Sequence record: MW760841.1
Reading direction: 5' to 3' (one strand)
Length of the DNA: 64,000 bases
Positions 3,869 through 5,349 of the stretch are shown here, in pieces. The stretch's first letter is position 1. Each line of letters starts with the position of its first letter. The notes beneath the pieces are model-generated. The model was not told where the DNA came from and searched no databases. It saw nothing but the letters and a program-made list of their open reading frames with translations. Position numbers and translations under genes: made by a program.

Positions 3869-3950
3869 GGGGGAGTGGCGGAGCGGTCGAACGCGGCAGA
3901 CTGTAAATCTGTTATCCCACACGGTGGTTCAAATCCATCCTCCCCCACCA
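3869..3950 (+). tRNA. tRNA-Tyr(GTA)
   Basis: Acceptor GGGGGAG/CTCCCCC, loop CTGTAAA, CCA; short 10-nt variable region. Confidence 0.9.
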
Positions 3951-3954
3951 CTTT

Positions 3955-4029
3955 AGGGGTATAGCCAAGCGGTAAGGCCCAGGGCTTTGATCCCTGTATG
4001 CCCTGGTTCAAATCCAGGTGCCCCTTCCA
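3955..4029 (+). tRNA. tRNA-Gln(TTG)
   Basis: Loop CTTTGAT, Gln-type D arm, CCA; A1-U72 and U73. Confidence 0.9.
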
Positions 4030-4036
4030 TTACGTT

Positions 4037-4114
4037 GCACCTGTAGCTCAGATTGGTCAGAGCACGAGTTTGAAAAACTCGGGGTCGCTGGTTCGAGACC
4101 AGCTGGGTGCACCA
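4037..4114 (+). tRNA. tRNA-Phe(GAA)
   Basis: Stem CGAGT/ACTCG, loop TTGAAAA, CCA. Confidence 0.92.
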
Positions 4115-4120
4115 TTTTGA

Positions 4121-4197
4121 TGTCTCGTAGCTCAGTTGGTCAGAGCGCGCCCCTGATAAGGGCGAGGTCAGTGGTTCAAATCCACTCGAGACAACCA
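4121..4197 (+). tRNA. tRNA-Ile(GAT)
   Basis: Acceptor TGTCTCG/CGAGACA, loop CTGATAA, CCA. Confidence 0.95.
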
Positions 4198-4203
4198 ATT
4201 TCC

Positions 4204-4290
4204 GCCGGGGCGGTGAAATTGGTAGATACATGGGATTTAAAATCCCCCGGCGTTCGCGTCGTGCGGGTTCGAGTCCCGCCCCCGGCACCA
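4204..4290 (+). tRNA. tRNA-Leu(TAA)
   Basis: Type II cloverleaf, loop TTTAAAA, CCA. Confidence 0.93.
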
Positions 4291-4294
4291 ATTC

Positions 4295-4370
4295 GGTTCT
4301 GTAGCTCAGTCGGTAGAGCACGCCACTCATAATGGCGCGGTCGTTGGTTCGATACCAGCCGGAACCACCA
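4295..4370 (+). tRNA. tRNA with CAT anticodon (elongator Met or Ile2; not initiator)
   Basis: Loop CTCATAA, G1-C72 paired, no triple G-C anticodon stem, CCA. Confidence 0.9.
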
Positions 4371-4494
4371 GTCACGAGAACGTAACCCTGCGGTTTGGTT
4401 AGTCACCTATACTAGCGGTTACGCGATGCCCTTATCTGCGGGGTGTGATATAGTGCGAGGGGTAGACTCTCTCAAGCAAGCAGACGCAAATTCT

Positions 4495-4570
4495 TCTCCC
4501 GTCATCTAGCGGTCCAGGATACCGGCCTTTCACGTCGGGCACACGAGTTCAAATCTCGTCGGGAGAACCA
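4495..4570 (+). tRNA. tRNA-Glu(TTC)
   Basis: Acceptor TCTCCCG/CGGGAGA, loop CTTTCAC, CCA. Confidence 0.93.
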
Positions 4571-4576
4571 AATTAG

Positions 4577-4740
4577 CAGGAGAGCTTTAGGGGTTCGTTT
4601 TCAGACGCCTAGGTTGTGGAACGTTGCATCCCGCGTCAAGCCGGATGTAATTGGGGTTCGACTCCCCACTAGGATGCCCTAAAGGTAGCGCCGTCACAGG
4701 CGAGCAACTAACACGAGGCGTCATTACACGCCTACTCCTG
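4577..4740 (+). ncRNA. Candidate ~165-nt ncRNA with an embedded tRNA-like domain
   Basis: Outer helices 4577-4582/4735-4740 and 4585-4592/4677-4684; perfect T-arm 4652-4668; two extra hairpins. Confidence 0.6.
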
Positions 4741-4749
4741 AATAACTGT

Positions 4750-4826
4750 AGTGCCGTAGTCGAGCTGGTTAAGACGCCTGCCTGTCACGTAGGAGATCGT
4801 GGGTTCAAGTCCCATCGGCACTGCCA
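4750..4826 (+). tRNA. tRNA-Asp(GTC)
   Basis: Acceptor AGTGCCG/CGGCACT, loop CTGTCAC, G73, CCA. Confidence 0.93.
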
Positions 4827-4902
4827 TATTTTCACGGACCTTATCAGCCGCCAACTGATATCATCTTAGAGCGATAAAGCCGGGTGGTGAATGGTGTATT
4901 AC

Positions 4903-4992
4903 GGAGAATTGACTGAGAGGCTGAAGGTGCTCCCCTGCTAAGGGAGTGTATGCGAAAGTGTACCATTGGTTCGAAACCAATATTCTCCGCCA
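4903..4992 (+). tRNA. tRNA-Ser(GCT)
   Basis: Type II, acceptor GGAGAAT/ATTCTCC, loop CTGCTAA, G73, CCA. Confidence 0.95.
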
Positions 4993-5101
4993 AACAATGA
5001 ACGTGGCCTTCCCAACGTAATTGCACATGAGCCCGAGGGCAACACTGTCTTTGCAAGTAAGAATCAGTCCTGCCTTTGATGGCGAGCGTTCACCCTACAA
5101 T

Positions 5102-5167
5102 GGTTTCTCCCGGTCGGTCCGGGGTCGTCCGTAATAGACGAGGTTGGTTCAAATCCAGCAGAAACAA
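5102..5167 (+). ncRNA. Compact tRNA-like cloverleaf with a non-canonical anticodon loop and no CCA
   Basis: GTTTCT/AGAAAC, CCCGG/CCGGG, TCGTC/GACGA, T-arm GTTGG-TTCAAAT-CCAGC. Confidence 0.55.
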
Positions 5168-5267
5168 GAACGATGAAGTTAGAGGCATAAACACCCGACT
5201 CATAATCGGATAGTGGTTTACCCGGCGGGTACTCCTTCGCAGGTTCGAATCCTGCCTTCGTTCGCCC
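5168..5267 (+). tRNA. Atypical tRNA-like gene with CAT loop, 28-nt variable region and no encoded CCA
   Basis: Acceptor GAACGATG/CTTCGTTC (one T.T mismatch), loop CTCATAA, T-arm GCAGG-TTCGAAT-CCTGC, ends GCCC. Confidence 0.55.
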
Positions 5268-5273
5268 TTTTTT

Positions 5274-5349
5274 GATTCCATAGCTCAGTTGGTAGAGCGG
5301 CGTCCCGTTAAGTCGTAGGTCCCAGGTTCGAGCCCTGGTGGAATCGCCA
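5274..5349 (+). tRNA. tRNA-Asn(GTT) with an atypical anticodon arm
   Basis: Acceptor GATTCCA/TGGAATC, G73, CCA; loop CCGTTAA (C33) and a T.T mismatch in the stem. Confidence 0.85.

What the first reader, a model, noticed from the sequence alone, without database searches (positions are those of the whole stretch)
4577..4740. tRNA elbow module buried inside a larger multi-helix RNA
Seen: a textbook T-arm (TGGGG-TTCGACT-CCCCA, 4652-68) runs directly into an acceptor-like helix CCTAG 4608-12/CTAGG 4669-73. A short GG-containing D-like loop and an 8-bp arm (4624-31/4643-50) precede it. Instead of ending in CCA, the module continues through an 8-bp helix (CTTTAGGG/CCCTAAAG) into a junction closed by CAGGAG/CTCCTG, with two more hairpins (4689-4702, 4716-33). 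Known: tRNA mimicry occurs in the tmRNA tRNA-like domain, bacterial YrlA Y RNAs and T-box ligands, and T4 encodes stable non-tRNA species in its tRNA cluster. Inference: a non-aminoacylatable tRNA mimic that could decoy elbow-binding proteins (RNase P, anticodon nucleases, tRNA-sensing defences), released by processing of the flanking tRNA-Glu and tRNA-Asp.
Basis: partly seen in the sequence, partly recalled or inferred. Interest (0 to 1): 0.75.

Follow-up and report, generated by a model that had tools for sequence, protein, structure and literature searches.

The report
Conserved phage RNA with tRNA-like arm
The 164 bases between two tRNA genes of this Erwinia jumbo phage encode one member of a large phage RNA family that I could not find catalogued, in which a nearly invariant four-helix core carries a tRNA-shaped arm that can neither decode nor be charged; its function is unknown.

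Summary
The window is Erwinia phage pEa_SNUABM_4, and the element is unannotated there.

It is not a decayed tRNA with free flanks. The "flanks" are the most conserved part. P1, P2, P3 and P4 plus an almost invariant 13-15 nt joining strand form a core shared by at least 116 distinct sequences. These come from cultured phages (Machinavirus, Seoulvirus, Moabitevirus, Ounavirinae, T5-like, V5-like, Chaseviridae, CBB) and from viral and metagenomic contigs.

Only 3 copies were found in 185,579 bacterial species genomes and none in 5,426 E. coli genomes. The family is usually inside tRNA arrays.

The tip of P2 carries a variable module:
- nothing (86-nt minimal form);
- a mini two-hairpin module;
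- a reduced tRNA mimic (this window);
- a near-perfect tRNA body with a disabled or expanded anticodon loop (up to 56 bits with Rfam tRNA);
- a permuted, YrlA-like module.

None has an encoded CCA.

Rfam 15, ARAGORN, the YrlA and tmRNA criteria and T4 rnaC/rnaD all fail to claim it.

Function is unknown. My best guess is a stable RNA that displays a locked tRNA body on a conserved recognition core.

The parts
4577..4582 (+). P1, 5' strand (CAGGAG). Its inner GAG is nearly invariant in the family.
   Evidence: Pairs with 4735-4740. The outer P1 pairs covary in 24 and in 98 sequences.
4583..4584 (+). J1/2, the dinucleotide AG, conserved.
   Evidence: A 92%, G 93% in 98 distinct sequences.
4585..4592 (+). 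P2, 5' strand. P2 is 8 bp in the family. It is followed by a conserved unpaired G at 4593.
   Evidence: Pairs with 4677-4684. 7-8 of its 8 pairs show compensatory change.
4596..4607 (+). P2a, a 4-bp hairpin with loop UUCA that ends directly at the first base of the acceptor-like strand.
   Evidence: 2 of 4 pairs are compensatory among window-type relatives. An equivalent hairpin abuts position 1 of the embedded tRNA body in relatives.
4608..4612 (+). Acceptor-like helix, 5' strand (CCTAG).
   Evidence: Pairs with 4669-4673. 3 of 5 pairs are compensatory. It corresponds to the 7-bp acceptor stem of relatives.
4613..4623 (+). D-loop-like single strand GUUGUGGAACG with GG at 4618-4619. There is no D stem.
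   Evidence: GTTGTGGAAC is identical in SNUABM_29 and 2050HW. Pairing of the GG with the T-loop is inferred.
4624..4650 (+). 8-bp arm (4624-4631/4643-4650) with an 11-nt loop, in the anticodon-arm position.
   Evidence: The helix is kept although its sequence differs in relatives. The loop is not conserved.
4652..4668 (+). T-arm: 5-bp stem and canonical T-loop UUCGACU.
   Evidence: 2 of 5 pairs are compensatory. A canonical T-arm is present in 58 of 116 distinct family members.
4669..4673 (+). Acceptor-like helix, 3' strand (CTAGG), followed by A-U-G. There is no CCA.
   Evidence: 0 of 49 relatives with such a module encode CCA here.
4677..4684 (+). P2, 3' strand (CCCTAAAG).
4685..4688 (+). 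J2/3, GUAG, conserved.
   Evidence: G 85%, U 62%, A 90%, G 89%.
4689..4702 (+). P3 hairpin: 4 bp, loop GUCACA.
   Evidence: All 3 modelled pairs are compensatory.
4703..4715 (+). J3/4, AGCAACUAACACG, the nearly invariant strand of the family.
   Evidence: Invariant in alignments A1 and A2. Minor variants occur in L053, L203, L208 and L218. The pattern used to find members inflates the apparent invariance.
4716..4733 (+). P4 hairpin, AGGCGU/ACGCCU, with a 6-nt variable loop. The stem sequence itself is conserved.
   Evidence: There is no covariation because the stem does not vary.
4734..4740 (+). J4/1 (A) and the P1 3' strand (CTCCTG).

Best explanation
What it is (shown): the element at 4577-4740 is a gene for a structured non-coding RNA. 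It belongs to a large, phage-borne family. The family is defined by a four-helix junction:
- P1 closes the two ends;
- P2 is 8 bp;
- P3 is a short hairpin;
- P4 has the fixed stem GGCG/CGCC;
- the joining strands AG, GUAG, (G)AGCAACUAACACG and A are nearly invariant.

A variable domain grows from the tip of P2. In most members this domain derives from a tRNA. In this window it is a reduced form: a 5-bp acceptor-like helix, no D stem, an 8-bp arm with a non-conserved 11-nt loop, and a canonical T-arm.

How it most likely works (inferred):
1. The RNA is transcribed with the tRNA array. It is freed as a roughly 165-nt stable species when RNase P and the 3' trimming enzymes mature the tRNA-Glu 6 nt upstream and the tRNA-Asp 9 nt downstream.
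2. The tRNA-like body stays locked inside it. No CCA is encoded. The strand leaving the acceptor helix runs straight into P2. The nucleotide before the acceptor helix is paired in hairpin P2a, a poor context for RNase P. The body can therefore be neither charged nor used for decoding.
3. The RNA then acts as a two-part adaptor. The invariant junction is a recognition surface for a conserved partner, which may be a protein or an RNA. The L-shaped body engages a factor that recognises tRNA bodies or elbows. It acts either as a tether, as in Y RNA, or as a non-consumable decoy for tRNA-directed enzymes.

My rough odds: a real conserved ncRNA family, 0.95; accumulates as a discrete RNA released by tRNA processing, 0.7; adaptor or decoy through the tRNA body, 0.3.
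For: Structure and family:
- Fold z = -3.4.
- All eight helices are kept by compensatory changes in window-type relatives.
- Core helices: 98% paired with 17 of 26 compensatory pairs in 24 sequences, and 96.3% paired in 98 sequences.
- The covariance model R1 finds one copy in the window (125 bits, E = 7e-32). It also finds members in at least 9 cultured phage groups and more than 100 metagenome contigs.
- In all, 116 distinct sequences of 86-293 nt.

Phage-specific and tRNA-linked:
- 3 true copies in 185,579 species genomes, each next to tRNAs.
- None in E. coli genomes.
- 81 of 116 have a same-strand tRNA within 2 kb, and 48 within 20 nt.
- The consensus scan found no promoter or terminator on the + strand inside the array.

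tRNA origin of the module:
- 58 of 116 have a canonical T-arm; 41 of these also have an adjoining 7-bp or longer acceptor helix.
- Among those 41, position 1 is G in 40, position 8 is U in 25, and GG is in the D-loop region in 35.
- The embedded body passes the Rfam tRNA gathering score in L299, L252, L241 and L267, at 34-56 bits.

Not decoding, not charged:
- ARAGORN gives 2-nt or 4-nt anticodons, or 'introns' of 4-120 nt. Its anticodon calls differ between close relatives.
- 0 of 49 have CCA. Hairpin P2a abuts position 1.

Module independence:
- Both standard and permuted (T-arm before D-arm) topologies sit on the same core. This fits a body or elbow that works as a unit.
Against: - There are no expression or end-mapping data. 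Release as a discrete RNA is inferred from spacing only.
- Two members (L030, 86 nt; L024, 107 nt) lack any tRNA-like module. The Moabite/Yaphecito copy has lost half its T-arm yet keeps an intact core. The core may therefore be the working part, and the tRNA body dispensable.
- No partner is identified. No protein family is linked across 132 loci, apart from HNH endonucleases (8 loci) and RtcB (5-6 loci), both common in tRNA arrays. No TROVE/Ro protein was seen.
- 8 of 35 curated members have no tRNA nearby, for example phage Aioli.
- Almost all members were collected with patterns drawn from J3/4 and P4, so the invariance of those parts is partly circular. Alignment A4 is fitted to the model.
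- That RNase P cannot cut at the P2a/acceptor boundary is an assumption.
Confidence: 0.4

Rival explanations
1. The core works on its own. The four-helix junction is the functional RNA: a ribozyme, a small-ligand aptamer or sponge, or a protein-binding site. The tRNA-like insert is only a natural 'tRNA scaffold' that gives stability, folding help or processing signals.
For: The conservation pattern is that of ribozymes and aptamers: covarying helices around invariant joining strands. Minimal members have no insert (L030, L024). Moabite has a broken T-arm and an intact core. The insert varies greatly, including cargo domains in the anticodon position. Several subtypes occur in one contig.
Against: About 80% of members keep a tRNA-like or mini-tRNA-like module, with selected tRNA body features (G1, U8, GG, T-loop). 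The constant 8-bp P2 suggests a geometric link between core and module. No Rfam ribozyme or riboswitch model matches.
Confidence: 0.27
2. Precursor cassette. The core is a structured leader and trailer that controls maturation of the embedded tRNA. The tRNA is cut out, receives CCA from the host enzyme, and acts as a non-decoding tRNA, for example as an amino-acid donor or sink. The window copy would be a decayed version.
For: Some embedded bodies are near-perfect tRNAs at 41-56 bits. M. smegmatis YrlA is cut by RNase P and can receive CCA (PMC4201824). KEY and L029 have 7-nt anticodon loops and are called Leu-UAG and Val-UAC.
Against: The true tRNAs of this phage encode CCA; the module does not. 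Anticodon loops are mostly aberrant and are not conserved between close relatives. Position -1 is paired in P2a. The permuted forms have a closed acceptor hairpin and cannot release a tRNA. This model gives no reason for the core to be far more conserved than the tRNA.
Confidence: 0.15
3. RNA-repair accessory. This would be a Y-RNA-like cofactor or substrate of the RtcB ligase pathway that phages use to mend cleaved tRNAs.
For: RtcB lies within about 1.5 kb in L030, L033, L044, L053, L274 and L314, in unrelated contigs. In bacteria RtcB is encoded next to Rsr and YrlA (PMC4201824).
Against: Only about 5% of loci have RtcB. No element lies beside RtcB in five cultured RtcB-encoding phages, even with filters off. 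No RtcB is found in this 64-kb window. RtcB genes often sit near tRNA arrays anyway.
Confidence: 0.05
4. A decayed tRNA pseudogene with unconstrained flanks, or a chance fold.
For: tRNA callers do not call the window copy. The Rfam tRNA model gives no hit even at E up to 10.
Against: The flanks are the most conserved part, in 116 distinct sequences from many phage lineages, with abundant compensatory changes.
Confidence: 0.01

Closest known systems
YrlA / bacterial Y RNAs (Rfam RF02553; Chen et al. 2014, PMC4201824)
   Same: A non-coding RNA in which a stem formed by the two ends carries a tRNA-like domain that is not used for decoding. It occurs in phages as well as bacteria. A few family members (L027, L335, L315) even have the permuted order of YrlA, with the T-arm before the D-arm. 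The proposed logic is also shared: one module binds a partner and the tRNA-like module engages tRNA-handling enzymes.
   Different: No Rfam match to the element. The only YrlA hit in the window (23.9 bits against a gathering score of 69) lies elsewhere, over tRNAs at 5210-5300. The best hit on a relative's module is 23 bits. The 5' Ro-binding motif GNCGAAN0-1G is absent. No Ro60/TROVE gene was seen nearby. The conserved core (P3, J3/4, P4) has no counterpart in YrlA. In the window, the tRNA-like body is joined through its acceptor end, not through the anticodon-stem position.
T4 stable RNAs rnaC and rnaD (species 1 and 2)
   Same: Small stable RNAs of unknown function, encoded inside a phage tRNA cluster and released with the tRNAs. 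rnaC ends in a T-arm and acceptor-like structure.
   Different: There is no sequence or structure homology. Model R1 finds nothing in the T4 tRNA/rnaC/rnaD region, even with filters off.
tmRNA tRNA-like domain
   Same: An acceptor helix plus T-arm with a D-loop-like single strand that lacks a D stem, as in the window copy.
   Different: There is no free CCA end and no tag reading frame. ARAGORN makes no tmRNA call and Rfam gives no hit. The rest of the RNA leaves from the acceptor end, not from the anticodon side.
Transfer RNA, and engineered 'tRNA scaffolds' that carry cargo RNA in the anticodon arm (the scaffold comparison rests on my own knowledge)
   Same: The embedded module derives from tRNA. 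In some relatives it passes the Rfam tRNA threshold. Several carry inserts of 4-120 nt in place of the anticodon loop, like scaffolded cargo.
   Different: The window copy fails tRNA models. No member encodes CCA. The acceptor end is closed by P2 and P2a. The anticodon loops are not conserved.
mascRNA / MEN-beta tRNA-like RNAs (RF01684)
   Same: This is the only Rfam model that touches the module at 4606-4675. It is a tRNA-like fold with a degenerate anticodon arm.
   Different: The score is 24.4 bits against a gathering score of 42.5. The family is vertebrate and nuclear. The likeness is one of shape, not relatedness.
ROOL and GOLLD RNAs (large phage-associated RNAs often found near tRNAs)
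   Same: Structured RNAs of unknown function, enriched in phages and next to tRNA genes.
   Different: They are far larger (roughly 500-800 nt). No Rfam match was found in the window or in 17 relatives' loci.

Membership tests
tRNA (RF00005) | Recognised by tRNA callers or the covariance model at the gathering score | tested here: not met
   No ARAGORN call and no RF00005 hit at E up to 10 for 4577-4740. Embedded modules of four relatives do pass, at 34-56 bits.
tRNA (RF00005) | 7-nt anticodon loop with a conserved anticodon | tested here: not met
   The window has an 8-bp arm with an 11-nt loop that is not conserved in relatives. Relatives show 2-nt and 4-nt 'anticodons', inserts, and inconsistent anticodon calls.
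tRNA (RF00005) | Free acceptor end with CCA, either encoded or able to be added | tested here: not met
   The 3' strand of the acceptor-like helix continues A-U-G into P2. 0 of 49 relatives encode CCA. Whether processing could create a free end cannot be tested here.
YrlA / Y RNA | Rfam RF02553 at the gathering score (69 bits) | tested here: not met
   No hit on the element. The best hit on a relative's module is 23 bits.
YrlA / Y RNA | 5' motif GNCGAAN0-1G (the Rsr/Ro60 binding site; PMC4201824) | tested here: not met
   Absent from 4577-4600 and from the family consensus.
YrlA / Y RNA | Encoded next to a Ro60 (TROVE) gene | tested here: not met
   No ORF family is shared across 132 loci apart from HNH endonucleases and RtcB. 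The Pfam scans of neighbouring ORFs showed no TROVE domain. The rest of the 249-kb genome was not scanned.
tmRNA | tRNA-like domain formed by the two ends with a 3' CCA, plus a tag reading frame | tested here: not met
   ARAGORN (tmRNA mode) and Rfam found none. The ends form P1, not an acceptor stem.
T4 rnaC / rnaD | Sequence or structure homology to the T4 species 1 and 2 RNAs | tested here: not met
   Model R1 finds nothing in L052, with default filters or with filters off. No similarity by eye.
[quoted passage not shown] | Two T-loops with the conserved patterns AG..A and UG..A | tested here: not met
   J3/4 contains AGCAA (fits AG..A) but no UG..A; the nearest is UAACA. This was a sequence check only. 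The 3-D fold cannot be tested here.
Any curated RNA family, including self-cleaving ribozymes and riboswitches (Rfam 15, 4227 models) | A match at the gathering score | tested here: not met
   Only tRNA hits were found, in the window and in 17 relatives' loci. Nothing overlapped the element.
New family defined here (model R1) | P1-P2-P3-P4 junction with the conserved J1/2, J2/3, J3/4 and P4 sequences | tested here: met
   Window 4576-4741 scores 125.1 bits, E = 7.4e-32, over the full length of the model. The window sequence was part of the seed alignment. The independent members L065, L066, L067 and L069 score 77-107 bits.

The most novel reading that the evidence does not exclude
This is a new class of phage RNA. 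An anticodon-disabled tRNA body, or other cargo placed at the anticodon position, is locked by an invariant four-way-junction clamp. It would work as an RNA-only effector. One possibility is a non-cleavable decoy or inhibitor of host tRNA-directed immunity or tRNA-processing enzymes. Another is that the clamp is itself a new ribozyme or a ligand-binding sponge. The co-occurrence of two or three subtypes in one genome would then reflect different specificities.
Probability: 0.25. Interest if true: 0.85.

Novelty: new variant of a known kind. Interest (0 to 1): 0.7.

Why it matters
Phage tRNA arrays are usually read as simple lists of tRNAs, and the stable non-tRNA species in them (T4 rnaC and rnaD) have had no known function for about 50 years.

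This element shows that a different, much more widespread structured RNA hides in such arrays across many phage families and habitats. Its core is conserved across phages of diverse, mostly unidentified hosts, which include Enterobacterales, with likely prophage copies in alphaproteobacterial and acidobacterial genomes. That degree of conservation is typical of ribozymes, aptamers and universal RNP sites.

It is also a natural case of a tRNA body reused as a structural or recognition module, in both standard and permuted topology. If it acts on tRNA-handling enzymes or tRNA-targeting defences, it would be an RNA-based counter-measure.

On the practical side, genome annotations currently label pieces of it as tRNA-OTHER, tRNA-Phe or small hypothetical proteins. 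A covariance model would correct that.

Tried and rejected
- Rfam at gathering and at permissive thresholds, on the window and on relatives: nothing but tRNAs, a sub-threshold mascRNA hit on the module, and sub-threshold YrlA hits (in the window at 5210-5300, not on the element; on L027's embedded module).
- Homology to T4 rnaC/rnaD: rejected.
- A dedicated neighbouring protein: all-against-all ORF clustering in 29 and then 132 loci gave only HNH endonucleases and RtcB.
- RtcB linkage: tested the other way round in five cultured phages that encode RtcB; no element was found.
- Host mimicry or a host copy: no blastn match in 5,426 E. coli genomes. An 8-nt complementarity I noticed by eye to 16S rRNA (quoted from memory, not checked with a tool) is what chance would give.
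- Double T-loop elbow-docking motif: the sequence signature is not met (compared).
- K-turn and sarcin-ricin readings of the GUAG/GAGC flanks of P3: the strand polarity and the variable third base do not fit. This was checked by eye only.
- Pattern scan GTTGTGGAAC..GGTTCGA, meant to enlarge the window-type subgroup: 118 loci, none a new member.
- Pattern GGTAGC..GAGCAACTAAC: mostly chance hits in coding sequence, with 3 real new members.
- Literature: full-text searches by sequence and by topic found no description. The supplements of the 10,006-candidate phage RNA catalogue (PMC10690425) are not held, so I could not check whether the family is listed there.
- Coding potential: the short CDSs annotated over the element in three genomes are on different strands and frames, so they are spurious.
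Full report
**Where we are.** The window is the first 64 kb of Erwinia phage pEa_SNUABM_4 (MW812338.1, Machinavirus, 249 kb; 100% identity). Positions 3869-5349 hold a same-strand array of tRNA genes. The finding lies in the unannotated gap between tRNA-Glu (4495-4570) and tRNA-Asp (4750-4826).

**Checking the observation.** The thermodynamic fold of 4577-4740 recovers the closing helix, the 8-bp helix, the 8-bp arm, the T-arm and both 3' hairpins. Its z-score is -3.4, and none of 200 shuffles folds as well.

ARAGORN does not call the region. The Rfam tRNA model gives no hit even at E up to 10. The only model that touches it is the vertebrate tRNA-like mascRNA, at 24 bits against a threshold of 42.5.

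**Relatives.** A sensitive blastn search found the whole element in other Machinavirus genomes (97-100% identity), in Seoulvirus pEa_SNUABM_29 (81%) and in the Serratia and Pectobacterium Moabitevirus group (74%). It found the 3' third alone in Ounavirinae, the 378-kb phage CBB, Citrobacter phage Tr1 and the T5-like Erwinia phage KEY.

Folding each relative showed the same plan. The plan is: a closing helix P1; the dinucleotide AG; an 8-bp P2; a variable domain at the tip of P2; GUAG; a short hairpin P3; a nearly invariant strand (G)AGCAAYUAACACG; a hairpin P4 with the fixed stem GGCG/CGCC; one A; and the P1 3' strand.

Pattern scans plus a covariance model (R1) then recovered:
- members in IMG/VR;
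- further cultured phages, namely phiEa21-4, ChuuTotoro, Aioli and Aeromonas phiA050;
- 106 model hits in 100 metagenome contigs.

After removing duplicates there are 116 distinct sequences of 86-293 nt, median 172. Only 3 genuine copies turned up in one genome for each of 185,579 bacterial and archaeal species, and each sits beside tRNAs, so they are probably in prophages. There is no match in 5,426 complete E. coli genomes. The window holds a single copy.

**Is the structure selected?** Yes.
- In 24 diverse sequences, 98% of cells in P1-P4 form standard pairs. 17 of 26 pairs change on both sides. No shuffle out of 500 reaches any of the five measures. Sliding the partner strand drops pairing to 31-50%.
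- In 98 distinct metagenome sequences the figures are 96.3% paired and 541 compensatory cells, against 161 expected. That alignment is fitted to the model, which favours the structure.
- For the inner helices specific to the window type, five sequences from three lineages give 98.6% pairing. P2a, the acceptor-like helix, the arm and the T-arm each have 2-3 compensatory pairs.
- P4 never varies, so it is supported by conservation only.

One caveat applies. Most members were fished out with patterns taken from J3/4 and P4, so the invariance of those parts is partly circular. However, a scan anchored on P3 and its flanks found three members with small changes there (L203, L208, L218). The blastn hits did not depend on any pattern.

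**What sits on P2.** The domain at the tip of P2 is the variable part.
- Two members have none (L030, 86 nt; L024, 107 nt).
- A large group, including the copies in the two alphaproteobacterial genomes (Bosea L062, Limoniibacter L058), has a 5-bp stem enclosing a 3-bp hairpin and a G-rich hairpin with a T-loop-like 7-nt loop.
- 58 of 116 have a canonical T-arm, and in 41 it continues into an acceptor helix of 7 bp or more. Among those 41, position 1 is G in 40, position 8 is U in 25, and a GG lies in the D-loop region in 35.
- In L299, L252, L241 and L267 the embedded body passes the Rfam tRNA threshold, at 56, 56, 41 and 34 bits.

These bodies are nonetheless not decoding tRNAs. ARAGORN reports 2-nt or 4-nt anticodons, or needs 'introns' of 4-120 nt in the anticodon loop. 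It also assigns different anticodons to close relatives, for example Lys and Asn in Arno162 and Wc4, or Val and Trp in L041 and L267. One clade carries a conserved hairpin domain of about 55 nt in place of the anticodon loop.

None of 49 modules is followed by CCA, although the phage's true tRNAs encode it. The acceptor 3' strand is followed by one nucleotide, then usually G-C, and then P2. On the 5' side, hairpin P2a abuts position 1.

A few members (L027, L335, L315) carry the module in permuted order, with the T-arm before the D-arm, as in YrlA.

The window copy, like those of SNUABM_29 and the 2050HW group, is a reduced form. Its acceptor helix is 5 bp. The D stem is replaced by the conserved single strand GUUGUGGAAC. 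There is an 8-bp arm with a non-conserved loop and a one-nucleotide variable region.

In Moabite and Yaphecito a 12-nt deletion removes half the T-arm and the acceptor 3' strand, yet the core is intact and scores 111 bits.

**Genomic context.** 81 of 116 distinct members have a same-strand tRNA within 2 kb and 48 within 20 nt. Because many contigs are short, these are lower bounds. Spacings of 1-10 nt to the neighbouring tRNAs are common; in the window they are 6 and 9 nt. The consensus scan found no sigma-70-type promoter or intrinsic terminator on the + strand inside the array. This is weak evidence, since jumbo phages use other promoters. Some members stand alone, for example in phage Aioli.

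The family is patchy within phage genera. It is present in 5 Machinavirus records (four distinct phages: SNUABM_4, SNUABM_8, SNUABM_9 and ChrisDB) and gave no match in Huxley, Machina, Parshik or Caitlin. It is in KEY and AAS21, and no T5, Felix O1 or T4 record is among the matches listed. That makes it an accessory trait.

Clustering the ORFs within 3.5 kb in 132 loci gave no common neighbour. The largest clusters are HNH homing endonucleases (8 loci) and RtcB RNA ligase (5-6 loci). RtcB is interesting because bacteria encode it with Rsr and YrlA. But five cultured phages that encode RtcB have no copy of the element beside the gene, so I treat the link as weak. Several contigs carry two or three copies, or divergent subtypes, side by side.

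**Comparison with known families.**
- *tRNA:* the window copy fails the callers, the anticodon-loop test and the free-end test.
- *YrlA:* this is the closest in concept, being a stem formed by the two ends plus a non-decoding tRNA-like domain, and it is also found in phages. The element, however, fails the Rfam threshold, lacks the GNCGAAN0-1G Ro-binding motif and has no TROVE neighbour. Its conserved P3-J3/4-P4 core has no counterpart in YrlA.
- *tmRNA:* there is no CCA end, no tag frame and no caller hit.
- *T4 rnaC/rnaD:* these occupy the same genomic niche but are not homologous.
- *Double T-loop module that docks tRNA elbows in RNase P, T-box leaders and the L1 stalk:* I checked for it because J3/4 contains AGCAA. 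The second signature, UG..A, is absent.

Full-text searches by sequence and by topic found no description of this RNA. I could not inspect the supplementary lists of the large phage candidate-RNA catalogue, so an unnamed prior listing cannot be excluded.

**How it most likely works.** What is shown is the gene, the fold, the family, its restriction to phages, its association with tRNA arrays, the tRNA ancestry of the arm, and the absence of CCA and of a conserved anticodon. The rest is inferred.

I think the RNA is released from the array transcript when the neighbouring tRNAs are matured, and that it accumulates as a stable species of about 165 nt. I think the tRNA body stays locked in it, because its 3' strand runs into P2 and its position -1 is paired in P2a. 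The RNA would then work as a two-part adaptor. The invariant junction binds a conserved partner. The L-shaped body engages something that recognises tRNA bodies or elbows, either tethering it, as Y RNAs do, or soaking it up as a substrate that cannot be consumed. I give this about 0.3.

The strongest rival, at about 0.27, is that the core alone is the effector (a ribozyme, an aptamer or a protein site) and that the tRNA body is a natural stabilising scaffold. The insert-less members and the Moabite deletion speak for that view. The widespread retention of tRNA body features speaks against it. A precursor-cassette model (about 0.15) and an RtcB-linked role (about 0.05) remain possible. The decayed-tRNA reading is refuted.

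**Verdict.** This is a real, widespread and apparently undescribed phage RNA family. It is a new variant of the known kind 'non-coding RNA with a tRNA-like domain', and its function is unknown.

Noticed in passing
window 5169-5263: The Rfam tRNA model scores 39 bits (threshold 29) on a 95-nt sequence with anticodon loop CUCAUAA (CAU) and a 26-nt insert in the variable region. ARAGORN does not call it, and it is not annotated in MW812338.1. It is probably an unannotated Met/Ile2-type tRNA with a long extra arm.
   Followed up: partly
window 5103-5165: A 63-nt mini-cloverleaf with T-loop UUCAAAU and a 7-nt middle loop, just upstream of the previous item. Its only match is a weak Rfam tRNA-Sec hit (17 bits, E = 2). 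It may be a second tRNA-like oddity in the same array.
   Followed up: partly
window 4371-4494: The 124-nt spacer between tRNA-Met and tRNA-Glu shows no fold signal (z = +0.4). It is unlike the element studied here.
   Followed up: partly
L008 1393-1475 (KEY); L065 1100-1172 (phiEa21-4); L066 1096-1172 (ChuuTotoro); L010 1517-1654; L004 1378-1509: GenBank records label the embedded module tRNA-OTHER (KEY, phiEa21-4) or tRNA-Phe (ChuuTotoro, where ARAGORN finds a 4-nt anticodon). They also place short hypothetical CDSs over the element, on differing strands. These are likely mis-annotations.
   Followed up: yes
L278 3337-3479 and 3492-3645; L263, L275, L290, L326; L242 1613-1738, 2218-2329, 2960-3119; L238: Several metagenome contigs carry two or three copies close together. 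Some are divergent subtypes: one lacks P3, and another has a different domain in place of P3. All share P1, P2 and the AACGAGGCG..CGCCUAC hairpin. This suggests a wider superfamily with diversified paralogues.
   Followed up: partly
L039, L041, L049, L252, L267 (inside the embedded tRNA): A conserved hairpin domain of about 55 nt, with compensatory changes in its stem, replaces the anticodon loop of the embedded tRNA body. The body still scores 34-56 bits as a tRNA in L252 and L267. It has no Rfam match.
   Followed up: partly
L027 4650-4718; L335; L315: The embedded tRNA-like module is circularly permuted, with the T-arm before the D-arm and a closed acceptor-like hairpin, as in YrlA. The YrlA hit on L027 is weak (23 bits, threshold 69).
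   Followed up: partly
L030 4602-5816; L044 468-1811; L053 5608-6311; L033 1867-2319; L274 506-1870; L314: An RtcB RNA ligase gene lies within about 1.5 kb of the element and its tRNAs in six unrelated contigs. In L053 and L033 the gene looks frameshifted or truncated.
   Followed up: partly
L004 1418-1569 (Serratia phage Moabite; the same region matched in Yaphecito): A 12-nt deletion removes the 3' half of the T-arm and the acceptor 3' strand while the core stays intact. This is a natural knock-out of the tRNA-like arm in a viable phage.
   Followed up: partly
L006 1295-1367 (CBB); L025 29-103: A suppressor-type tRNA with anticodon CUA, annotated or called tRNA-Pyl, lies 10-11 nt upstream of the element in CBB and in a related 355-kb contig.
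   Followed up: no
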